Shown here: piece by piece, positions 1,226 to 61,935 of the stretch
Position numbering within the stretch: the stretch's first letter is position 1
How the letters are laid out: each line of letters opens with the position of its first letter
Assembly (NCBI RefSeq): GCF_006345805.1
Contig: NC_043012.1
Span: forward strand, 6,820,001-6,884,000
Source: Octopus sinensis
Taxonomy: Eukaryota
DNA: 64,000 nt
Reading direction: 5' to 3'
Notes under the pieces: model-generated
Told to the model about the DNA's origin: nothing
The model's database searches: none
Seen by the model: only the letters and a program-made list of their open reading frames with translations
Made by a program: the position numbers and the translations under genes

Positions 1226-1810
1226 ATAATTTATTTTCAAATGCAGAAATGCCGTTAGAATAGCAGAAACATTGGGTAAATTACTCTTACAAAAAGAAAA
1301 AAAATTGTCAAAAATCAGTCATGGGACTCAAACCCACATCTCTTGAAGATTCCAGCCAAGTGCTTTACCATTAAGTTAAACTGCCTGCCGACAATTTAAT
1401 CCACTTTTTAGATGCAATAAAGTTAAATGTATGACCACGTGTATATAAATATAAATAAACTAATATTTGTTTTTTTTTATAAATGCCAAAATGTATATTG
1501 TAAGGTGCAAATAAGACAATAATTTATTTTGAAATGCAGAGACACCACTATAACAGCAGAGACGTTGGGTAAATTACTCTTACAAAGTGGAAAAATTTGA
1601 CAACAACCACCCATGGGACTTGAACCCAGATCCCTTGGCGACTGTAGCCAAATGTTTTATCATTAAGTTAATCTGCCCACTGACAAATCAATCCATGATT
1701 TTAGACACTCTAAAACTAAATGTATATAATATAAACAAAACCAACATTTGATTTTTACAAACATCAAAATGTGTCTTGCAAGATAGAAAATAAGATGATA
1801 GTTTCTTTAT
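1226..1810. repeat. Two diverged tandem ~293-bp units, each with a tRNA-like segment on the minus strand
   Basis: ATAATTTATTTT(C/G)AAATGCAGA...TTGGGTAAATTACTCTTACAAA at 1226 and 1519; GGGACT(C/T)(A/G)AACCC B-box complement in both. Confidence 0.7.
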
Positions 1811-6980: not shown

Positions 6981-7064
6981 GAAGTCAGTTTACAGAACAA
7001 AAGCTGTGTGGATATCTATTGTGCTGCAATAAAACTCCAGATTAATTAAGATTAAACCACAAAT

Positions 7065-7077
7065 ATGTATGTATGCA

Positions 7078-7116
<39 letters not shown>

Positions 7117-7210
7117 GTGTATGTATGTATGTATGTATGTATGCATGTGTGGTGTGTGTGTATGTATGTATGTGTGTATGTATGTATGTATGTATGTATG
7201 TATGTATGCA

Positions 7211-7249
<39 letters not shown>

Positions 7250-7294
7250 GTGTATGTATGTATGTATGTATGTATGTATGTATGTATGTATGCA

Positions 7295-7327
<33 letters not shown>

Positions 7328-7454
7328 ATGTATGTGTGTATGTATGTATGTATGTATGTATGTATGTATGTATGTATGTATGTGTGTATGTATGTATGTA
7401 TGTATGCATGTGTATGTGTGCGTGTGTGTGTGTGTATGTATGTATGTGTGTGTG

Positions 7455-7485
<31 letters not shown>

Positions 7486-7862
7486 GTATGTATGTATGTA
7501 TGTATGTACGTACGTATGTATGTATGTATGTGTGTGTGTATGTATGTATGTGTGTATGTATGTATGTATGTAAGTATGTATGTATGTATGTATGTATGTA
7601 TGTGTGTATGTATGTATGTGTGTGTGTATGTGTGTATGTATGTATGTGTGTATGTATGTATGTATGTATGTATGCATGTATGTATGCATGTATGTGTGTA
7701 TGTATGTATGTATGTACGTATGTATGTATGTACGTACGTATGTATGTATGTATGTATGTATGTATGTATGTATGTATGTATGTATGTATGTGTGTATGTA
7801 TGTATGTGTGTGTGTATGTGTGTATGTATGTATGTGTGTATGTGTGTATGTATGTGTGTATG
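7065..7862. repeat. ~800-bp compound (TATG)n/(TG)n microsatellite
   Basis: Direct inspection; gives open frames on both strands (YVCM and HTYI repeats). Confidence 0.97.
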
Positions 7863-7982
7863 GATCTCTCCATTTGGCATTCTTGAAGCCAGAAGGTGTC
7901 GGGGTCCTGTCAGGGGCGTGGAAACCTTGAAGTAGTTGGAACCAAATCAAACTATTTTAAATAATATATATATATGTATGTA

Positions 7983-10189: not shown

Positions 10190-10671
10190 TCTCACATGTC
10201 TGCAATTTCTTTGAAAATTGGTCTCTAATCAATAACCTTAAGGACTTTGCGTGTTAACTGATGAGTTTTTGTTTCAATATCCTAGTCCTTTCAAAGAAAA
10301 AAGCCTTCATTCTGGAAGTGTTCCAAAACGTGTGCCAGTTCTTAGATGTTTAATCATCTTCTTTTAACTCTTTGAAATTTTTTTGCAAACCACTTCTAAT
10401 GCTCCAATTACAACTCTAGATTCCCCCCTCCTTCCTTCCTTTACAATGGTCCGATCTATTCTACTTTCCGATCCCAATCCAAGTTGATTGTGTTTTGTAA
10501 TCTATTCGTCTCTCTCCGAGTCTGATTGTCAAGTATTTATGTTGCTATTGTCATTGTATATCAGGACATCTGTCTTTCAGCTAGTTCCACAGGATGGTGG
10601 AAGTGGGTGAAGAGGAAGGGGTAGAGGGGGATGAGGAGGAGGATGAGGAAGAAGAAGAAGGAGGAGAGGAA

Positions 10672-12010: not shown

Positions 12011-12344
12011 TCTATGCCATCTGTGGACAGGCTTATAAAACTCAAAAAACAAACAGTGCTGGTCCATGGCTTTCATAAACATTCTTTCAAGGTCAGAGTT
12101 GTCAAAACATGGAATAAACTACTTACATCAAGTTAGATGTCAGGACATCTAAATCCTTCAAAAATTCTATACTTCTTGAAATATATCAACACTACTGACA
12201 TGCCACTTCATCCTTTCCTCCATATGTCACTTTTTACTGGTCACTTTTCTATCATCTCCTCTTGTATCCTGTGTACGGGTCATGTATTTTTGGCTATCAT
12301 CGCTGTCTGGTCTTGCTGCTTTTTGATCTTTTTAGTTCTTTTTT

Positions 12345-12757
12345 TGTTTTAGTCATTTGACTGTGGCCATGCTGGAGTATTGCCTTTAGTCGAACAAATC
12401 GACCCCAGGACTTATTGTTTGTAAGCCTAGTACTTATTCTATCGGCCTCTTTTGCCAAACCACTAAGTTACGGGGATGTAAACACACCAACATCGGTTGT
12501 CAAGCGATGGTGGGGGGGACAAACACAGACACACAAACACAAACACACACGCACACACACACACACACACAAACATGCACACACACACACATACACTTTC
12601 GATGTGCTTCTTTCAGTTTCTATCTTCCAAATTCACTCACAAAGCTTTGGTCAACCCGGGGCTATAATAGAAGACACTTGCCCAAGGTGCCATGCAGTGG
12701 GACTGAACCGGGAACCATGTGTTTGGTAAGCAAGCTACTTACCACACAGCCACTCCT
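12345..12757 (-). mobile_element. SINE family A, full length
   Basis: Complete copy from the TTTAGTCATTTGACTG tail to the CCACACAGCCACTCC head. Confidence 0.9.
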
Positions 12758-15290: not shown

Positions 15291-15429
15291 AGGGAGAGAG
15301 AGAGATGTATATATATATATGGCCCTTGGTGCATATGGCTCAGGAAGGACTTTTGATCTTTTTGATGTGGGTGTGGAAGATTTTGAGTAGTGGGGAGAGA
15401 AACAAATATATCATCATAATCAATATTCC

Positions 15430-15805
15430 TTTATTTGTTTCAGTCATTTGACTGTGGTCATGCTGGAGTACTGCCTTTAGTCAAACAAATTGGCCCCAGG
15501 ACTTATTCTTTGTAAGCCTAGTACTTATTCTATCGGTCTCTTTTGCCGAACTGCTAAGTTACAGGGATGTAAACATACCAAACATTAGATGTCAAGCAAT
15601 GGTGGGGACAAACACACTCACACACACACACACACACACAATATACGACGGGTTTCTTTCAGTTTTTGTCTACCAAATCCACTGACAAGGCTTTGGTCAC
15701 CCCAAGGCTATAGTAGAAGACACTTACCCAAGGTGCCATGCAGTGGAACTGAACTCAGAGTCATGTGGTTGGTAAGCAAGCTACTTACCACACAGCCATG
15801 CCTGC
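15430..15805 (-). mobile_element. SINE family A
   Basis: Homology to 12345-12757. Confidence 0.9.
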
Positions 15806-17859: not shown

Positions 17860-18365
17860 AAATATATACATACATACATGACATGACATGACAGCCACAT
17901 CCTCGTTACATGAGAAAAACCATTGTCAAGAAGACTTACTGAAATGATTCATGACTGTTGCCATGTGATACCCGTATATGACTTTTAAGCCTGGCCAAGC
18001 TTTGACACATTTTATTACATACTAGACAACTGTGCTGGCTGGCAGGAGAAACAGGTTCCACCATATGCACTCTCTTAACATGTCTTTTTAGACCTCCAAC
18101 TGAGAGGCACTCCCTTCCACATTTTGCACACGTTCTGTTATGCATTTTAATAGCCACATCATTGTTTATCATGGGGCGATTTCTATGAGAATTTTGATGG
18201 CTCACCAGGCCTGCACAACTCAAACCACACACATAAAAAGCAACACTTTCTCACTCTCCACAGGTTCCCCCCTTCTAAACCCCCTCCAACATGCACTGTC
18301 TTCCTCCATCCATCATGGTCTTGTGCCTCCCGCTCCCAATTACCAGCTGCAGTTCCTGTCTGTAT
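17860..18365 (-). mobile_element. RTE (BovB-like) LINE 3' fragment with C-terminal C2H2 zinc fingers
   Basis: WEREAQDHDGWRKTVH (RTE W..LA.DR..WR motif), then CGLSCAGLVSHQNSH, CAKCGRECLSVGGLKRHVKRVH and CLVCNKMCQSLARLKSHIRVSH; (CATGT)/(TATG) tail. Confidence 0.7.
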
Positions 18366-18614
18366 TAGAGCACTTTTACATACATACATACATAAATACA
18401 TACATACACAAATACATATATACATATTATACAATTCTTTCTCTCAAACTCACCTTGTTCCTCAACCTCAAATCTCTCTATCTCTCTTCAGCAAGACACC
18501 TGCCACTACCCTTCTGTCCTAGTTTCTTATCCTTCCATTTTGTATCCCAATCAGTTGAAGGGTCCTGTGTAGGTAACCTCACTGTTGATGGTGCCACATA
18601 GAGACAGCCAGTAC

Positions 18615-19640: not shown

Positions 19641-20029
19641 AGATGAAGCAGCGAGCTGTCAGAATCTTGAGCATGCCAGGCAAGAATGCTCAGCAGCATT
19701 TGATCCATCTTTATGTTCTGAGTTCAAACTCCGTTGAGGTCAACTTTGGCTTTCACCCTTTGGGGTTTGTTACGATAAGTACTAGTTAAGTATTTCCTTG
19801 AAATTGCTGGCCTTGTGCTAAAAATTGAAACCATAATTTGTTATCAGCAGAAAGTTATGAAAATAACTCAAGGGCCAAGAAATTCGTGTATCACACTTAC
19901 CAAACTTCACAAGAGCCATCTATTAAACTAATGGCCCTTGATCCACTTCTAGAATTTTCTGCTGAATATGAACATAAGAGCACATAATCACTCAGACACA
20001 CTCACAGAAATATACACATTTGTTTGCAG

Positions 20030-20032
20030 ACT

Positions 20033-20064
<32 letters not shown>

Positions 20065-20909
20065 CAACACACACACACACACACACATTAATGTTTGTAT
20101 CCCTACTCGAAGGTGACAAGCTGGCAGAAATGTTAGTACACCGGGCGAAATGATTGGCGGTATTTCGTCTCATTACGTTCTGAGTTCAAATTCCACCAAG
20201 GTCGACTTTGCCTTTCCTTCTTTCAGAGTCGATAAATTAAGTACCAGTCGGCTACTGGGGTCAGTCTAATTGACTGGCCATCCCCCCAAAAAAATTTCGG
20301 GCCTTGTGCCTAGAGCAGAAAAGAATATTGTTAAGGCGGTGAGCTGGCAGAAACGTTAGCATGCCGAGCAAAATGCTTAACAGTGTTTCGTCTGTTTTTA
20401 TGCTTTGAGTTCAAATTCCACTGAGGTCGACTTTGCCGTTCATCCTTTCAGGGTCGGTAAATTTAGTACCAGTCGAGTACTGGGGTCGATCTAATTGATT
20501 GGCCCCCTACCCCAAAATTTCAGGCCTTGAGCCTAGAGTAGAAAAGAATATTTATACACTCACACACACACACAAAATAACACGTAGATGCATTCAAGCA
20601 CACAGAGTCATACATACGTTTGCCAGTCTCCACTGATATTGTGTCAGCCTGACATACATTCCCAAGTTGTCCAATGCATGACAGAGGAATTTCAATGTCC
20701 TATATAATTAGAAGAAACATCTCACTCAATTATACACCATTCAGTCTAGAACTTTCCATTATAGAATGCAAAAATTCCCCCCTCCCGCTCACACACTTAC
20801 CCACATGCCCACACATAAACACGTGCACACTCTCTCACACATAAAGTGCACGTGCTTTCGTAGATACGTGCATGCACTTGTAAAAGATTCATAATTCAAA
20901 AATTTAGAA

Positions 20910-20951
<42 letters not shown>

Positions 20952-21305
20952 TCTAATGTGGATATATACATATGAATGTGCATCTATGTATGCATACCTA
21001 TGCATATATTCATATATGCTTGTTTGTGTCTCTATATAAGTATGTATGTACATTTATTTATATGTGCGTGTGTGGGTGGGTGTGTGGGTGGGTGGTTGTA
21101 TGTGTAAATATTAATATGCATGCTGATAATGGATTTAGGAAGAATATTTCTCAGCCATCATTTGGAATATCTCTGGTTTAATAGCTACTCAACTAAAAAC
21201 ATCAGGGAATTCTTCAGGACAGAAATTCTTCTACCAGCAACATCAACAAGGCAAATTTATTGATATATATATATATATATATATACATATATGCACACAC
21301 ACACA

Positions 21306-21338
<33 letters not shown>

Positions 21339-22180
21339 CACACACACACACACACACATTAATGTTTGTATCCCTACTCGAAGGTGACAAGCTGGCAGAA
21401 ATGTTAGTACACCGGGCGAAATGATTGGCGGTATTTCGTCTCATTACGTTCTGAGTTCAAATTCCACCAAGGTCGACTTTGCCTTTCCTTCTTTCAGAGT
21501 CGATAAATTAAGTACCAGTCGGCTACTGGGGTCAGTCTAATTGACTGGCCATCCCCCCAAAAAAATTTCGGGCCTTGTGCCTAGAGCAGAAAAGAATATT
21601 GTTAAGGCGGTGAGCTGGCAGAAACGTTAGCATGCCGAGCAAAATGCTTAACAGTGTTTCGTCTGTTTTTATGCTTTGAGTTCAAATTCCACTGAGGTCG
21701 ACTTTGCCGTTCATCCTTTCAGGGTCGGTAAATTTAGTACCAGTCGAGTACTGGGGTCGATCTAATTGATTGGCCCCCTACCCCAAAATTTCAGGCCTTG
21801 AGCCTAGAGTAGAAAAGAATATTTATACACTCACACACACACACAAAATAACACGTAGATGCATTCAAGCACACAGAGTCATACATACGTTTGCCAGTCT
21901 CCACTGATATTGTGTCAGCCTGACATACATTCCCAAGTTGTCCAATGCATGACAGAGGAATTTCAATGTCCTATATAATTAGAAGAAACATCTCACTCAA
22001 TTATACACCATTCAGTCTAGAACTTTCCATTATAGAATGCAAAAATTCCCCCCTCCCGCTCACACACTTACCCACATGCCCACACATAAACACGTGCACA
22101 CTCTCTCACACATAAAGTGCACGTGCTTTCGTAGATACGTGCATGCACTTGTAAAAGATTCATAATTCAAAAATTTAGAA

Positions 22181-22222
<42 letters not shown>

Positions 22223-22535
22223 TTCTAATGTGGATATATACATATGAATGTGCATCTATGTATGCATACCTATGCATATATTCATATATGCTTGTTTGTG
22301 TCTCTATATAAGTATGTATGTACATTTATTTATATGTGCGTGTGTGGGTGGGTGTGTGGGTGGGTGGTTGTATGTGTAAATAATTAATATGCATGCTGAT
22401 AATGGATTTAGGAAGAATATTTCTCAGCCATCATTTGGAATATCTCTGGTTTAATAGCTACTCAACTAAAAACATCAGGGAATTCTTCAGGACAGAAATT
22501 CTTCTACCAGCAACATCAACAAGGCAAATTTATTG

Positions 22536-22566
<31 letters not shown>

Positions 22567-22580
22567 TGCACACACACACA

Positions 22581-23646: not shown

Positions 23647-23689
23647 AATCTATCTATCTATCTATCAATCTACTCTTTCATTTTTTACT

Positions 23690-23906
23690 CTTTTACTTGT
23701 TTCAGTCATTTGACTATGGCCATGCTGGAGCACTGCCTTTAGTTGAGCAAATCGACCCCAGTAAGCCTAGTACTTATTCTATCAGACTCTTTTGCTGAAC
23801 CGCTAAGTTACGGGTACATAAACAAACCAGCATCGTTTGTCAAGTGATGTTGGGGGGACAAACACAGACACACAAACATATACACACATGTATATATACA
23901 TATACA

Positions 23907-23960
<54 letters not shown>

Positions 23961-24120
23961 CGATGGGCTTCTTTCAGTTTCCGTCTACCAAATCCACTCA
24001 CAAGGCTTTAGTCGGCCCGAGGCTATAGTAGAAGACACTTGCCGAAGGTGCCATGCACTGGGACTGAACCGAGAACCATGTGGTTGGTAAGCAAGCTACT
24101 TATCACACAGCCATTCCTGC
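23690..24120 (-). mobile_element. SINE family A, full length
   Basis: Homology to other copies. Confidence 0.9.
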
Positions 24121-35584: not shown

Positions 35585-35860
35585 TCATTTCTACAGCTGA
35601 GTGAACTGGAGCAATGTGAAATAAAGTGTCTTGCTCAAGAACACAACATGCAACCCGGTCCAGGAATCGAACTCACAACTTCTCGATTGTAAGCTCAATG
35701 CTCTAACCACAGAGCCATGCCCCTTCACACACAGCATTGGAGTAACAAGAAATGAAGTGTTTTGCTCAAGATCACAATACTGCCTATTCCAGGAATTGAA
35801 CCTATGATGTTGTGATCGTGAGTACAACACTCTAAGCACTAGACCATGCACCATTACATA
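35585..35860 (-). mobile_element. Two tandem SINE family E heads
   Basis: CTTGCTCAAGA.CAC..CCAGGAAT.GAAC occurs twice. Confidence 0.65.
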
Positions 35861-36689
35861 CTAATTGCAAATAAATCTCACTGTCATACCAGCAGTGTCT
35901 ATAATTTACAGTCTGCCTGTCACCAACCTTGACCTGTGTCCAGTGTACTATTTTCCACTGAACTAGGAAAAATATTGCCTTACTCAGAAAACAAGGAAGG
36001 TTGGCAACAGGAAGTGCTTTAGGCCATAGCAAATTCACTTCAACAAATCTTGTCTGATCCATGCAAACATGGAAAAATAGATGCTAAAACAATGACGATT
36101 ATGATGATGATGATATATAAATTTTCTATATCATTTGTAAGATTCATGATGTAATGAAATAAATTTTTGCTGTATGATGAGTGGGTCATTTTGCCAATAA
36201 TAAACACATGCACTAGTTCTATTTCACTTCTTTTATTATTTGTTTGTCAATTGGTTAACGATTCAATCAATTAATTAATCAACTGTTTGATGAATCATTT
36301 GGTTTAATTAATCATCAATCAATCAATCATGATTCGACCAGTTATGTTTGTCGAATTCTTCTTTTTGCCATTTGGATCTTATTTAACAAAGTTGATCTGG
36401 AGCAGAGAGGGTATGTCAACCCTAGTTGAGCAGACCCGTTTTCAAAGGTACACCTTGTGGTGGTGTTTCAGTAACTCTGAGGGATATGTCAGCAAGGTAG
36501 AACCTTCTGATAGGGCCTATCATGCTGAAAAGGTTAAAGGATGGAGGGCAGACTAATATGTGCCACCACTTGTTAGAGGTAAAAATGGGTTTGCATTGGG
36601 CCAACATCACCCCTACCAAGAAAAAAAAAACATAGTTATAAAAGCATTGATGATATTTTAAAACCAACAGAACCTGGGAGAGCAAAAAC

Positions 36690-36955
36690 CTTTCCTCGGG
36701 GAAATATATAGAACCAGTACAATAAAATGTGCAAAGAATTCTGCATTACACATCATGCCCTGACCTGGAACCCACAAGGGATAGAGTAGAGAGGATGCCC
36801 TGAAAAATAGCTGAAGTGGGGATACTGAGACAGAACTGAAAAAAAAACAAGGATCCAACAGGAGAGAAGCAGGAAAAAGACAGGTCAGAGTTGAAAAGAG
36901 TGGAGAACAGTCATCAATGGCCAATGCTCCATTGGAAGCAAAGGGTCTAAGAGAA
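36690..36955 (+). mobile_element. RTE LINE 3' fragment, second subfamily
   Basis: ITHHALTWNPQG (RTE ALxWxPxGxRxRGRP motif) and a WRTVINGQCS-like end. Confidence 0.6.
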
Positions 36956-39293: not shown

Positions 39294-39303
39294 GTAATAA
39301 GAA

Positions 39304-39997
39304 AGTGATAAGTGCAGAATTTGTGGACAAAATGGTGAAACCATATGGCATATTACCAGTCAATGTATGCCACTTATCCAGAAAGAATATACGAGATGTC
39401 ATGACAATATAGCCAAGCTTTACCATTGGAACCTTTGCAACAAGTATGGACTTGACAGAGCAAAAAAGTGGTACAAATATAAACCTGAAGGCATCATCGA
39501 AAATGATAATGCAAAGACCCTATGGGATTTTATGATTCAGTGCGACCATGAGATAGAGAATAGGAAGCCAGACATAGTCTTAATTGAGAAAGAACGCAAA
39601 CTATGCTGGATCATAGATATAGCATGCCCAGCTGACAACAAGGTATGTGATATGGAAGAAAGAGATGTCGAAAGGTATAATAGGTTAGCTTGGGAGGTTA
39701 AGCTGTTTTGGTCGATGAAAAAGGTGGTGGTAATACTGATAATTGTTAGAGCCCTGGAAACAGTGAGAAAAAAATCTTGAGAAGTACATGGAACAAATGG
39801 GGGTTGCAATAAGGGTGGAGCACTTGCAGAAAGCAGCACTGCTTGGAACTGCTCGAATACTCCAAATGGTGCTTGAAAAATAAGGTGTGTTACCTTAGTT
39901 CACTGCTAGTGAACAGCTGACACCAAAGTACATCTCCAGTGTTAGAAGCTGAGCAAAGACAAATAACAACAACAACAATAATAATAATAATAATAAT
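39304..39997 (+). mobile_element. R4/Dong-like non-LTR retrotransposon 3' fragment (CCHC knuckle plus RLE endonuclease) flanked by (AAT)n
   Basis: CRICGQNGETIWHITSQC, QKEYTRCHDNIAK, LWDFMIQCDHEIENRKPDIVLI, IIDIACPAD; frameshift at ~39775, then EHLQKAALLGTARILQMVLEK* (stop 39881-39883). Confidence 0.9.
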
Positions 39998-40274
39998 GTA
40001 ATGTGTGTTAGAAAATGTTATCACCTGCTGTTGCAGCTGCTGCTGCTGCCGAGGTAAATGTAATTTTCTTCTTCATTAGGAAAATACCAATAAAATAATT
40101 TTACCACCAAAAACATTTATTCAATTTCGTTTAGTTGTAGCTAAAGAATTTTTTTCTTCTTCTTCACATTGATTTCAAAAAGTGGATTATTGCTTAGCAA
40201 GTAGCGGATTGAACTTGAAATGGTATAAAACTTGTTTAGCAGCCAGCATCACTGAATGATGAGTCGAAACTTAC

Positions 40275-40413
40275 CTTTAATAACGGTTTATTGATTTATC
40301 TTGTAGCTGTTGTGTCAGCGAGAAAGAGTGAGTGTACGATGTAGTGGAGGTTGAGAGGAACCGACTGAGATTGATGTGTGAGTGGCTGAGTGAGACATAT
40401 TTCTTCAACTTAC
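40275..40413 (-). other. Candidate 139-nt non-coding exon / RS-exon beginning with a recursive 5' splice site
   Basis: Acceptor TTTCTCTTTCTATTTTCAG(40414) immediately followed by GTAAGT; donor AAG|GTAAGT at 40275/40274; stop codons in all three frames. Confidence 0.65.
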
Positions 40414-40486
40414 CTGAAAATAGAAAGAGAAATATAAGAAAATGGTATAAGAAACGGTTTGGATATTCAAAAGAATTTTTAGTAAT
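40414..40486 (-). promoter_or_regulatory. Strong 3' splice site: branch-point-like TACTAA (40484-40479), AG-free pyrimidine-rich tract, CAG
   Basis: No AG on the minus strand between 40486 and the acceptor AG. Confidence 0.7.
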
Positions 40487-40639
40487 CTTTTTTCATATTT
40501 GAAAATTTAAAAATATGATTCATGCAAACCAAATTTGGTGAATGCATTAGAGGCACTGGATAAGAATGTTATTTATTACCCTTACTTAAGTTTGGAAACT
40601 AATGGTCCTGGTTCTAATCCTGCTTGGTATCATGTGCAC

Positions 40640-41688
40640 ATCTTTACTCTTTTACTTGTTTCAGTCATTTGATTGCGGCCATGCTGGAGCGCCGCATTTA
40701 ATCGAGCAACTCGACCCTGGGACTTATTCTTTTGTAAGCCCAGTACTTATTCTATCGGTCTCTTTTGCCAAACCGCTAAGTAACAGGGACATAAACACAC
40801 CAGCATCAGTTGTCAAGCAAGCTAGGGGGACAAACACAGACACACAGACACACACACGCATATATATATATATATATATACGACGGGATTCTTTCAGTTT
40901 CCGTCTACCAAATCCACTCACAAGGTGCCCTGCAGTGGGACTGAACCTGGAACCATGTGGTTGGTAAACAAGCTACTTACCACACAGCCACATTTTTTTG
41001 TAATCTTTTACTTGTTTCAGTTATTGGACTGCAGCCATGCTGGAGCACCACTTTGAAGGGTTTTAGTTAAATGGATTGACCCCTTGTTTGTTGTTTTTAA
41101 AGTTTGGTACTTATTCTGTTGTATTCCCTTTGGTGAACACCCTAAGCTATACAGGCATAAACCCATCTTTTATTTTTCTTGTTTCAGCAGTTGGAGTGTG
41201 GCCATGCTGGGGTACCACTTCGAAAAGTTTTTTGTCGAATCGATTGACCCCAGAACATATTTTTTAAAGTCTGGTTCTTAGTTGACTGGAGCTCTTATGG
41301 AGGACATTATGTGGATGTAAACAAACCAGCACTGATTGTCAAGCAGTGGAGAGTGGGGAAAACTCATTCACACACATATATCACACATACATGTATATGT
41401 GTGGGTACATATATGGAAAACGGATGTTAAACAATGATGATGATGATGTTGATGATATATATATATACTCTTACTCTTTTTACTCTTTTACTTGTTTCAG
41501 TCATTTGACTGTGGCCATGCTGGAGCACCGCCTTTAGTCGAGCAAATCGACCCTGGGACTTATTTTTTGTAAGCCTAGTACTTATTCTATCGTTCTCTTT
41601 TTGCCGAACTGCTAAGTGACGGGGACATAAGCACACCAGCATCGGTTGTCAAGCAATGCTAGGGGGACAAACACAGGCACACAAACAC

Positions 41689-41723
<35 letters not shown>

Positions 41724-41930
41724 CACATATACGACAGGCTTCTTTCAGTTTCCGTCTACCAAATACACTCACAAGGCATTGGTCGGTTTTTTCACAGTTT
41801 CCATCTACCAAATTCACCCCCCAAAGCATTGATCAGTTCAGGGCTATGGTAGGAAGACACTTGATAAAAGAGCCATACAATAGGACTGAGCTCAAGATTA
41901 CACGACTGCAAAGCAAGTTCCTTAACCACA
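40640..41930 (-). mobile_element. Cluster of SINE family A copies (40640-40990, 41000-41350, 41480-41930)
   Basis: Repeated TTGTTTCAGTCATTTGA..GC.GCCATGCTGGAGC tails. Confidence 0.85.
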
Positions 41931-47952: not shown

Positions 47953-49242
47953 CGAGGGACGTTCAATAAGTAATGCCTCTGACTCACTTGCAGTTGTTTG
48001 ATCTAGCTGAAATTTTGCATGTGCAATCATTTATATGTCTATAGAGTAAGTGGCAAATTACAGCTCTGAATTAATTGTGGTTTCTGATTTACAGGTGTTT
48101 GAACCGAGTCAAGTGTGAAATGGAGCCTGTTGAGTGTCGAGCAGTGATCCGGTTTTTGTATTTGAAAGGACGCACACCACGGAAGACTTTTGATGAAATG
48201 AAAGTAACTTATGGTGATGATGCCCCATCATATGACTTTGTAAAACGCTGGCATCGTGAATTCAAACATGGTCGGAACTCTGTGGAAACAGCTCCCAGAT
48301 CTGGTCGCCCCTTCTGCCATTGATGAGGCATCTGTCCGTCAAGTTGAGGCTGCCATTTTCGAAGATCGACACATAATTATTCGCCAAATAGCCCATGAGG
48401 TCAAGATTAGTACCGGGTCTGTGGAAACTATCATTCATGAACATTTGCATATGCAAAAGGTGTCTGCCAGATGGATTCCCAGGTTGCTCACGCCTTTCCA
48501 GAAGCAAGAACGCGTCGAGTGCTCGAGGGTGAATTTGGAGATGTGCCAAGAAGATGAGTCAAAATTTTTCAAAAGACTGATTACGCATGAAGAAACCTGG
48601 GTCCATCACGATGATCCAGAGACCAAAGCCCAGTCAATGCAGTGGAAGCACCGTGATTCACCCCCTCCAAAGAAGGCAAGGGTGCAGCCCTCCGCTGGCA
48701 AGGTCATGCTCACAGTCTTCTTGGACCAGGACGGAGTAGTGATGACAGATTTCCTGGCAAAGGGTACCACAATTGCAGGAGCCTATTATGCTTCACTTTT
48801 GAGGAAATTAAGAGAAGTTATCAAAATCAAGAGGCGGGGCAAGATAAGCAAAGGCATCCTCCTCCTGCAGGACAACGCTCCGGTCCACAACTCGCGTGTC
48901 GCCAGATCAGAAGCACAGGCGTATGGCTATGAACTCCTCCCCCATCCCCCTGCTTTCCTGGCCTTGCACCCTCTGATTTTCACCTCTTCCCAGTCATGAA
49001 GTTGTTTTTGAAAGGAAAACATTTCCCAGATGATGCAGCCTTGATTTCTGAAGTCACATTCAGGTTGGAGGACCAAGCTGGGGTCTTCTACAAAAACGGT
49101 CTCCAGAGCTGTATCAAACGATGGGAGAAATGCGTAACTCTGGGTGGTTGCTATGTAGAAAAAGACTAATAACTGTGCCAAGTTTCGTTGCTCTACTGCC
49201 ATGGGAAGTGGGTCAGGGGCATTACTTATTGAACGCGCCTCG
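47953..49242 (+). mobile_element. Full-length mariner (1290 bp) with 25-bp TIRs and TA target-site duplication
   Basis: TA-CGAGGGACGTTCAATAAGTAATGCC ... GGCATTACTTATTGAACGCGCCTCG-TA (2 mismatches). Confidence 0.95.
48120..49169 (+). pseudogene. Mariner DD34D transposase pseudogene, Himar1/irritans-like
   Basis: MEPVECRAVIRFLYLKG..RSGRP, frameshift ~48310, WIPRLL, ITHEETW (catalytic D to E), QDNAPVH, LPHPP, frameshift ~48950, LAPSDFHLF..RWEKCVTLGGCYVEKD*. Confidence 0.93.
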
Positions 49243-60149: not shown

Positions 60150-60249
60150 NNNNNNNNNNNNNNNNNNNNNNNNNNNNNNNNNNNNNNNNNNNNNNNNNNN
60201 NNNNNNNNNNNNNNNNNNNNNNNNNNNNNNNNNNNNNNNNNNNNNNNNN
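60150..60249. other. Assembly gap (100 N)
   Basis: Run of N. Confidence 1.
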
Positions 60250-61230: not shown

Positions 61231-61695
61231 ATGACTGCCTGAATCGACATAAACGTATCTGTCAAGACCTACCAAAAACTGAGCAAGTATAAAGATCTTG
61301 AAATAGAAATTAGCGAAATGTGGAACCTGAAAACTAAAACAATACCTGTTGTCATAGGTGCCCTAGAAATGATAGCGAAAGGGGCTGATTGCTATCTAGC
61401 TCAGATACCAGCAAACCCCAAATGACAGAAATTCAAAAGATAGTGCTCATAGGAACTGCCCATATCCTACGTAAAATACTGTCTATGTAATCTCAAGTTT
61501 TAAAACAAACACATTATTTTCTTATGGTTTTTTAAAACATTCTCTAGAACAACACTATGCACAAAACCAAATATATGGCACCCTAGGCATAACACCAGCA
61601 TGAACCTCTAACTTGCTGTCTCTTGAAGTCTCTGGGTGAAACTTGGAGCCAAGTTGTACAAATGCAAAGCAAAAGTCAAACATATAATAATAACG
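61231..61695 (+). mobile_element. R4/Dong-like RLE LINE 3' end, second subfamily
   Basis: IDINVSVKTYQKLSKYKDLEIEISEMWNLKTKTIPVVIGAL...EIQKIVLIGTAHILRKILSM* (stop 61488-61490), then 3'UTR and TAATAA tail. Confidence 0.85.
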
Positions 61696-61769
61696 ATGAT
61701 GATGAGGAGGAGGTGGAGGAGGAGGATGATGAGAAGGAAGAGGAGGAGGGGGAGGAGGAGGAGGAGGAC

Positions 61770-61935
61770 AATATCAGCACTCAACTACCAACATGGCTGA
61801 AAAACATCGGTGCATGTGTGAAGGTAGAACACCTACAAAAATCAGCATTGCCTGTAACTGCGAGGATTCTTCGCAGGGTTCTTGAATATAAGGTGTGAGT
61901 TGTCATCACATAATAATAATGATAATCATAACAAG
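61770..61935 (+). mobile_element. R4/Dong-like RLE LINE extreme 3' end, third subfamily
   Basis: VKVEHLQKSALPVTARILRRVLEYKV*, then (AAT)n. Confidence 0.75.

What the first reader, a model, noticed from the sequence alone, without database searches (positions are those of the whole stretch)
40270..40486. Recursive splice site plus RS-exon architecture on the minus strand
Seen in sequence: branch-like TACTAA, a ~70-nt AG-free pyrimidine-rich tract, then TTTTCAG|GTAAGT (a perfect acceptor fused to a perfect donor at 40414/40413), and a second perfect donor AAG|GTAAGT 139 nt downstream. The segment between them has stops in all three frames and is unique sequence. Established: this layout marks ratchet points in Drosophila and RS-exons in long vertebrate neuronal genes. 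I am not aware of it being characterised in cephalopods. The alternative is an ordinary 5'UTR or poison exon that happens to begin with GTAAGT.
Basis: partly seen in the sequence, partly recalled or inferred. Interest (0 to 1): 0.75.

Follow-up and report, generated by a model that had tools for sequence, protein, structure and literature searches.

The report
Recursive-splice-like motif, function unproven
The minus strand really does carry a near-perfect acceptor fused to a perfect donor, with a second perfect donor 139 nt downstream, which is the textbook layout of a recursive-splicing exon. Nothing I could run shows that it is transcribed, lies in a gene or is conserved, so it is a good candidate and not a demonstrated case.

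Summary
Observation: confirmed at the stated coordinates. On the minus strand TTTTCAG|GTAAGT sits at 40414|40413 behind a 71-nt AG-free zone. The last 20 nt of that zone are 85% pyrimidine. AAG|GTAAGT closes a 139-nt segment (40413-40275) that has stops in all three frames. It is the only site in the 64 kb, on either strand, that passes even a relaxed recursive-site motif.

Chance: a loose version of the layout is expected about 100-200 times per ~2.7 Gb genome. A version as strict as observed is expected about 0.3-2.4 times.

Context: the 630-bp block is single-copy within the window and sits between a LINE 3' end and a SINE. I found no host-gene exon in the window. Every protein-like ORF that I could identify is transposon-derived.

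Limits: no transcript data or related genome could be reached, so strand of transcription, intron context, conservation and genome-wide copy number are untested.

Two features fit a competing or included exon better than a silent fly-type ratchet point. The downstream donor is as strong as the recursive one. Two poly(A) hexamers lie just before that donor.

My estimates: spliceosome-used, recursion-competent exon ~0.45 (true recursion ~0.3); fortuitous pseudo-exon ~0.4.

The parts
40479..40484 (-). TACTAA, a distal branch-point-like hexamer at the 5' edge of the AG-free zone
   Evidence: Read directly; coordinates.
40416..40486 (-). 71-nt AG-free zone ending in the pyrimidine tract. It holds two nearer yUnAy branch candidates (CTTAT) with their A at 40448 (-35) and 40435 (-22).
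   Evidence: no AG in the zone; 70% pyrimidine overall and 85% in the last 20 nt; only 3% of AG-AG gaps on this strand are this long.
40408..40416 (-). CAG|GTAAGT: a 3' splice-site AG (ends 40414) fused to a consensus 5' splice-site hexamer (40413-40408). This is the putative recursive site.
   Evidence: It is the only YAG|GT site in the window, on either strand, with a pyrimidine tract >=0.75 and a 5'ss-like hexamer.
40275..40413 (-). 139-nt candidate RS-exon or pseudo-exon. It is non-coding (stops in all three frames), A/C-rich and G-poor (A46 C41 G16 T36), 41% GC against 20% in the 100 nt upstream, with a GAAGAA purine motif at 40406-40401.
40276..40292 (-). Two poly(A)-signal hexamers inside the last 18 nt of the segment: AATAAA at 40292-40287 and ATTAAA at 40281-40276, directly upstream of the strong donor.
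Evidence: The naive chance of >=2 hexamers in 30 nt is ~0.001, though the local sequence is A-rich.
40269..40277 (-). [quoted passage not shown]
39301..39960 (+). Downstream flank in minus-strand terms: the 3' part of a LINE (ORF tail), followed by an (AAC)n(AAT)n tail to ~39998. The candidate block is not part of this element.
   Evidence: There is 74-75% nt identity to elements in two ENA contigs, one with an RVT_1 ORF just upstream of the tail. In the longer alignment the homology ends at 39939.
40640..40985 (-). Upstream flank in minus-strand terms: a tRNA-derived SINE ('B') in sense orientation whose 3' end lies ~225 nt upstream of the AG|GT. The candidate block is not part of it.
   Evidence: Other copies end at the same point (~40640-40643).

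Best explanation
The unit 40486-40269 on the minus strand is a recursion-competent, non-coding cassette exon, an 'RS-exon' in the broad sense of Blazquez et al. 2018. The proposed mechanism is inferred, not shown.

1. If the minus strand is part of a pre-mRNA, U2AF and U2 engage the long AG-free pyrimidine tract and the CAG at 40414.
2. U1 engages AAG|GTAAGT at 40275|40274, and the 139-nt segment is defined as an exon.
3. Ligation to the upstream exon rebuilds a 5' splice site from that exon's last bases plus GTAAGT (40413-40408).
4. The rebuilt donor then competes with the equally strong downstream donor. Use of the rebuilt donor removes the segment without trace, which is recursion. Use of the downstream donor includes a segment that carries stops in every frame, giving a poison or untranslated isoform.

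Because the two donors are matched, I expect a competitive, switch-like outcome of the vertebrate type. I do not expect a fully silent zero-length ratchet point of the fly type.

What is shown is only that the sequence has all the signals. Transcription, use of either site and recursion itself are inferred. I put about 0.45 on the unit being used by the spliceosome at all, and about 0.3 on recursion actually occurring.
For: - The signals are near-perfect and correctly spaced: 17/20 pyrimidines, a 71-nt AG exclusion zone, branch candidates at -22 and -35, CAG|G, a 139-nt segment and AAG|GTAAGT.
- This is the only site in 128 kb of strand sequence that passes even a relaxed recursive motif.
- Two of the window's three AGGTAAGT octamers lie 139 nt apart on one strand, with no sequence similarity beyond the motif, so they are not a duplication.
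- The constellation as strict as observed is expected only ~0.3-2.4 times by chance in a 2.7 Gb genome.
- The block is single-copy in a window that is 52% repeats, and it belongs to neither flanking transposon.
- GC is higher in the segment than upstream of it (0.41 against 0.20), and a GAAGAA motif lies near its 5' end.
- Stops in all frames and a 3n+1 length match the described properties of cryptic RS-exons (PMC8605326).
- The absence of recognisable exons across 64 kb is compatible with a very long intron.
Against: - There is no evidence of minus-strand transcription, a host gene or conservation. Every route to outside data came back empty.
- The absence of exons in the window fits an intergenic desert equally well.
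- Under looser criteria the layout is expected 100-200 times per genome by chance, and the strict criteria were chosen after seeing the site.
- The segment is low-complexity-like (CACTCA-type, G-poor), as expected from decayed microsatellite in this genome.
- The downstream donor is not weaker than the recursive donor, and the segment is longer than fly cryptic RS-exons.
- Two poly(A) hexamers sit in the segment, whereas typical RS-exons lack them (PMC7997972).
- Genome-wide copy number is unknown.
Confidence: 0.45

Rival explanations
1. Fortuitous pseudo-exon. The two donor motifs and the pyrimidine tract arose by chance in neutral, AT-rich, microsatellite-prone DNA between transposon insertions. 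The region is either not transcribed in this orientation or is ignored or tolerated by the spliceosome, and it has no function.
For: - There is no independent support of any kind for use of the sites.
- The window is 52% repeats, and every protein-like ORF I could identify is transposon-derived.
- Under loose criteria the layout is expected 100-200 times per genome. Even under strict criteria about one is expected.
- The segment looks like decayed CACTCA-type low-complexity sequence.
- About 2% of all positions have an upstream 20-mer that is >=85% pyrimidine.
- No RNA structure or known RNA family is present.
Against: - The probability per 64-kb window is ~1e-4 for the strict layout.
- It is the sole site in the window with both halves of the motif.
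- Such a perfect exon-like unit would be deleterious in a sense-transcribed intron, so under this reading the region should be untranscribed or antisense. That is untested.
Confidence: 0.4
2. Cryptic or alternative last exon. The 3' splice site at 40414 brings in a short terminal exon that ends at the AATAAA/ATTAAA signals (40292-40276). The consensus U1 site immediately downstream (40274) normally suppresses cleavage and polyadenylation. The unit would then act as a U1-guarded premature-termination site and not as a recursion point.
For: - Two poly(A) hexamers lie within the last 18 nt before the donor. The naive chance is ~0.001.
- CA dinucleotides and a moderately GU-rich stretch follow within ~50 nt.
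- Cryptic last exons lie in long introns of neuronal genes and use AATAAA or ATTAAA, and typical RS-exons lack such signals (PMC7997972).
- That U1 bound close to a poly(A) signal inhibits its use is established knowledge (telescripting). I did not test it here.
Against: - The local sequence is A-rich, and poly(A)-like hexamers occur about once per 670 nt on this strand, so the hexamers may mean nothing.
- The same lack of transcription, host-gene and conservation data applies as for the other readings.
Confidence: 0.07
3. Part of an unrecognised transposable element, for example an exon-intron boundary of a transposon-borne gene or an old element fragment. Its copies would lie elsewhere in the genome, so the motifs would be inherited from a repeat consensus and not selected at this locus.
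For: - About half of the window is repeated within itself, and more must be repeated genome-wide.
- The block is bounded on both sides by transposon ends.
- 'Unique' was only tested inside the window.
Against: - There is no second copy in 64 kb, and no terminal inverted repeats or other hallmarks.
- No ORF in the block has a homologue among 5.8 billion proteins.
- Homology of the flanking LINE and SINE stops short of the block.
Confidence: 0.05

Closest known systems
Drosophila intronic ratchet points with cryptic RS-exons (Hatton 1998; Duff 2015; Joseph 2018; Pai 2018; Joseph & Lai 2021, PMC8605326)
   Same: A juxtaposed strong acceptor and GTAAGT donor behind a long pyrimidine tract; a downstream donor that allows exon definition; an exon body that is out of frame and stop-rich; a setting compatible with a very long intron.
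   Different: Fly cryptic RS-exons are ~50 nt, and most downstream donors lie <100 nt away; here the distance is 139 nt. In flies the ratchet-point donor is generally stronger than the RS-exon donor; here the RS-exon donor is itself perfect. Fly sites are ultraconserved and supported by saw-tooth and junction reads, none of which is available here.
Vertebrate recursive sites and RS-exons in long neuronal genes (Sibley 2015, as described in PMC6224609 and PMC8605326)
   Same: An RS-exon defined first, then competition between the reconstituted donor and the RS-exon donor. Inclusion introduces premature stops. The matched donors here fit this binary-switch behaviour best.
   Different: The vertebrate cases lie in very long introns of identified, brain-expressed genes and are conserved. 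Here no host gene, intron length, expression or conservation is known.
Annotated (expressed) RS-exons repressed by the exon junction complex (Blazquez 2018, PMC6224609)
   Same: Any exon whose first bases rebuild a 5' splice site after ligation qualifies. An exon starting with GTAAGT is an extreme example.
   Different: Those exons are mostly constitutive coding exons. This segment cannot be an internal coding exon because it has stops in all frames.
Poison or pseudo-exons and cryptic last exons in long introns (for example SFPQ-repressed cryptic last exons, PMC7997972)
   Same: A strong acceptor, a short non-coding segment with stops and AATAAA/ATTAAA hexamers, and a TE-rich, exon-poor setting that could be a long intron.
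   Different: Cryptic last exons end at a cleavage site, not at a consensus donor. Here a perfect donor follows the hexamers immediately.

Membership tests
Recursive splice site / ratchet point with RS-exon | [quoted passage not shown] | tested here: met
   TTTCTATTTTCAG|GTAAGT at 40414|40413, with 17/20 pyrimidines and a 71-nt AG-free zone.
Recursive splice site / ratchet point with RS-exon | A downstream 5' splice site that defines a short cryptic exon (flies: ~50 nt, mostly <100 nt) | tested here: inconclusive
   A perfect AAG|GTAAGT is present, but 139 nt downstream. That is longer than the fly norm (PMC8605326, PMC6224609) though within ordinary exon size.
Recursive splice site / ratchet point with RS-exon | The recursive donor is stronger than the RS-exon donor, so that the exon is skipped | tested here: inconclusive
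   The intronic hexamers are identical (GTAAGT). The RS-exon donor has an ideal AAG on its exon side. The recursive donor's exon side comes from an unknown upstream exon, so at best the two are equal.
Recursive splice site / ratchet point with RS-exon | The exon body is out of frame or stop-containing, and is not itself conserved | tested here: met
   139 nt = 3n+1, with stops in all three frames. The conservation part was not testable.
Recursive splice site / ratchet point with RS-exon | Location on the sense strand inside a long intron of an expressed gene | not testable with these tools
   No host-gene exon was recognisable in the 64 kb. All hits are transposon-derived. The genome is absent from the searchable collections.
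Recursive splice site / ratchet point with RS-exon | Evolutionary conservation of the AG|GT motif and of the downstream donor | not testable with these tools
   No orthologous sequence could be retrieved.
Recursive splice site / ratchet point with RS-exon | RNA evidence: saw-tooth coverage, junction reads from the upstream exon to the RS site, and lariats that start at the RS donor | not testable with these tools
Cryptic last exon / intronic polyadenylation site | A 3' splice site followed by a poly(A) signal and a used cleavage site | tested here: inconclusive
   The acceptor plus AATAAA (40292-40287) and ATTAAA (40281-40276) are present. Cleavage-site use is not testable. The hexamers are common in this A/T-rich DNA.
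Interspersed repeat | Multiple copies, or membership of a flanking element | tested here: not met
   The block is single-copy within the window. LINE homology ends at 39939 and the SINE ends at ~40640. Genome-wide copy number was not tested.

The most novel reading that the evidence does not exclude
The unit is a three-way decision point inside a giant intron of a cephalopod gene. [quoted passage not shown]

- the regenerated donor removes it (recursion);
- the equally strong downstream donor includes it (a stop-containing isoform);
- when U1 is limiting, the two poly(A) signals immediately upstream of that donor end the transcript.

This would be both the first recursive site described outside insects and vertebrates and an RS-exon with a built-in, U1-guarded termination signal.
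Probability: 0.04. Interest if true: 0.7.

Novelty: new member of a known kind. Interest (0 to 1): 0.3.

Why it matters
Recursive splicing has been documented experimentally in Drosophila and in vertebrates. The held literature contains no paper that links it to octopus, and the few papers that mention it together with cephalopods or molluscs do so only in passing. A validated site in a large, long-intron lophotrochozoan genome would show that stepwise intron removal through RS-exons is a general bilaterian answer to very long introns. It would also give a comparison point for the fly pattern (many silent sites) and the vertebrate pattern (few silent sites, many included RS-exons). On its own, one motif-level candidate without RNA or conservation support changes nothing yet. 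Its value is as a precisely defined, cheap-to-test target.

Tried and rejected
1. Exact look-ups of window ORFs, including two next to or across the site, in the contig and protein collections. None is on record, so this genome is not represented there.
2. Homology search with a concatenation of all ORFs overlapping 40144-40499. No hit, so there was no route to orthologous or paralogous DNA.
3. Metagenome scan with the 21-mer across the junction. It gave two contigs that match only 21-23 nt, which is chance.
4. Host-gene hunt:
   - I inspected ORFs >=45 aa, and later >=40 aa in unique sequence.
   - I ran Pfam on the ten most protein-like ORFs.
   - I ran a word-based search and a full HMMER search of the longest unique minus-strand ORFs.
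   - The zinc-finger ORF at 17939-18250 is the C-terminal tail of a LINE ORF2. The others match anonymous repeat-like ORFs. No gene exon emerged.
5. LINE membership of the block is rejected. Homology to related elements stops at 39939.
6. SINE membership is rejected. SINE copies end at ~40640.
7. Non-coding RNA or a structured element is rejected. There is no Rfam hit, fold z = -0.5, and there are no inverted repeats of note.
8. Strand of transcription from U1-site and poly(A) asymmetry is uninformative. The GTRAGT excess on the minus strand (46 against 22) can be traced in part to the internal TGGTAAGTAGC of sense-oriented SINE B copies. Poly(A) hexamers are symmetric.
9. A U1 snRNA gene on the plus strand (ACTTACCT) is rejected by inspection. 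There is no further U1 similarity, and Rfam is negative.
10. Species identification from SINE sequence in the literature found nothing.

Full report
**1. The observation**

Reading the minus strand confirms every element at the stated coordinates.

| Element | Minus-strand coordinates |
|---|---|
| TACTAA | 40484-40479 |
| AG-free stretch | 40486-40416 (71 nt) |
| TTTTCAG\|GTAAGT | AG ends 40414, GT starts 40413 |
| AAG\|GTAAGT | last exon base 40275, GT at 40274 |
| Segment between them | 40413-40275, 139 nt |

The segment has stops in all three frames. One frame stays open until a TAA two bases before the donor. The AG-free stretch is 70% pyrimidine overall and 85% in its last 20 nt. Only 3% of AG-to-AG gaps on this strand are that long. 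Two nearer branch-point candidates (CTTAT, with the A at -35 and -22) make the distal TACTAA unnecessary.

**2. Chance**

- AGGTAAGT occurs three times in the window on both strands together, and two of the three are these sites.
- Of seven YAG|GTRAG sites, only this one has a pyrimidine tract.
- Under a relaxed definition (>=75% pyrimidine, YAG|GT, partial donor score) it is the only hit in 128 kb of strand sequence.
- In Markov-model simulations a loose constellation (any GTRAGT 30-300 nt downstream) appears 0.0025-0.005 times per window. That is roughly 100-200 times in a 2.7 Gb genome.
- With criteria as strict as the observed site (>=17/20 pyrimidines and a second MAG|GTAAGT), the expectation falls to about 0.3-2.4 per genome.

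The strict figure is post hoc, and the genome size is my assumption for an octopus-like genome. The fair reading is that a genome would hold only a handful of such sites by chance, but not none.

**3. Surroundings**

- The window is 37% GC, full of microsatellites, and 52% repeated within itself.
- The 630-bp block 40011-40642 that holds the site has no other copy in the window.
- Downstream in minus-strand terms lies the 3' part of a plus-strand LINE (39301-39960 plus a microsatellite tail). Its homology to related elements in two ENA contigs, one of which carries an RVT_1 ORF just upstream, ends at 39939.
- Upstream lies a sense-oriented tRNA-derived SINE whose copies all end near 40640.
- The block has no inverted repeats of note, no Rfam match and no unusual RNA structure.
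- On the plus strand I found only a 56-aa ORF without homologues, plus weak GTGAGT-type motifs that are the mirror image of the CACTCA-rich exon body.

**4. Host gene**

I found none.

- ORFs over 40-45 aa on both strands look like low-complexity or transposon debris.
- Pfam identifies a decayed mariner at 48075-49166.
- A full HMMER search of the twelve longest unique minus-strand ORFs hits only transposon-type proteins. The zinc-finger ORF at 17939-18250 is the C-terminal tail of an RVT_1 LINE protein.

The absence of exons fits a very long intron and a gene desert equally well.

**5. Strand clues**

These are uninformative.

- The GTRAGT excess on the minus strand (46 against 22) is traceable in part to a donor-like motif inside the SINE, TGGTAAGTAGC, in at least three copies.
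- The SINE is 12:2 sense on that strand.
- Poly(A) hexamers are symmetric.

**6. Outside data**

Exact look-ups, a homology search across the site and a metagenome pattern scan all failed to reach this genome or a relative. Transcription, conservation and genome-wide copy number therefore remain untested.

**7. Mechanism**

The signals are good enough that any pre-mRNA containing this strand should define the 139 nt as an exon. After ligation to the upstream exon, the first six bases rebuild a donor. That is the definition of an RS-exon (PMC6224609).

The literature says efficient, traceless recursion needs the rebuilt donor to beat the RS-exon donor. It also says fly cryptic RS-exons are about 50 nt, with donors mostly within 100 nt. 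Here the downstream donor is itself consensus (AAG|GTAAGT) and lies 139 nt away. I therefore expect competition and partial inclusion, closer to the vertebrate switch model than to a silent fly ratchet point. All of this is inference from sequence.

**8.

AATAAA (40292-40287) and ATTAAA (40281-40276) lie in the last 18 nt before the donor. Typical RS-exons lack poly(A) signals, whereas cryptic last exons in long introns use exactly these hexamers (PMC7997972). A poly(A) signal followed directly by a U1 site suggests a guarded termination site as a minor rival. The sequence there is A-rich, however, and the hexamers may be noise.

**9. Weighing**

I compared rough genome-wide counts of real and chance sites that would look like this one. 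All of these counts are my own estimates.

| Class | Rough genome-wide count |
|---|---|
| Chance sites | 0.3-2.4 |
| Ordinary non-coding exons that happen to start with GTAAGT | 0.5-1 |
| True recursive sites | 0.1-6, depending on whether this lineage resembles vertebrates or flies |

From these I put:

| Reading | Probability |
|---|---|
| Unit is used by the spliceosome | ~0.45 (recursion proper ~0.3) |
| Pure chance | ~0.4 |
| Last-exon reading | ~0.07 |
| Unrecognised repeat | ~0.05 |

**10. Novelty and verdict**

The held literature has no paper that links recursive splicing with octopus, and only passing co-mentions with cephalopods or molluscs. If real, the site would be a new member of a known kind in a new clade. 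That would be useful but not surprising, because the mechanism is regarded as unified across animals.

The interpretation can be neither supported nor refuted with the tools at hand. Interest is modest until a genome look-up and RNA data are brought in.

Noticed in passing
window 40276-40292 (minus strand): Two poly(A)-signal hexamers (AATAAA, ATTAAA) lie in the last 18 nt of the candidate exon, immediately upstream of the consensus donor. This arrangement is atypical for RS-exons and resembles a U1-guarded termination site.
   Followed up: partly
window, 14 copies, for example 12337-12747, 15424-15793, 23684-24108, 40640-41210, 41479-41776: A tRNA-derived SINE ('B') is strongly orientation-biased: 12 copies are sense on the minus strand against 2 on the plus strand. 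At least three copies carry a donor-like TGGTAAGTAGC, which inflates minus-strand GTAAGT counts. The cause of the bias is unknown.
   Followed up: partly
window 48075-49166 (+): A decayed mariner/Mos1-type transposon (HTH_48 and Transposase_1 domains), split over at least two reading frames.
   Followed up: yes
window 39301-39960 (+), 61243-61900 (+), 10367-10501 (-): Three 3' fragments of one LINE family. The family tail has no Pfam model, but it has 65-67% aa relatives in ENA assemblies, in one of them just downstream of an RVT_1 ORF (L001).
   Followed up: partly
window 17939-18443 (-): A C2H2 zinc-finger ORF that looked like a possible gene exon. It is the C-terminal tail of another LINE ORF2 family (RVT_1 plus terminal zinc fingers in homologue P0033).
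   Followed up: yes
window 20027-21300 and 21298-22575: A head-to-tail duplication of a ~1.27-kb unit at 99.4% identity. It is either a very recent tandem duplication or an assembly artefact.
   Followed up: partly
window 60150-60249: A run of 100 N, which is an assembly gap.
   Followed up: no
window 1313-1385 (-): An Rfam tRNA match (36 bits) that ARAGORN does not call. It is probably a SINE-derived or degenerate tRNA-like sequence.
   Followed up: partly
window 35594-35860 (-) and 36425-36745 (-): Two unique-in-window ORFs with 41-48% aa matches to anonymous short proteins from other assemblies and no Pfam domain. They are probably unclassified repeat families.
   Followed up: partly
window 6990-7950: A ~900-bp imperfect tetranucleotide-type microsatellite (TGTA/TGCA-like) that produces long spurious ORFs on both strands.
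   Followed up: no
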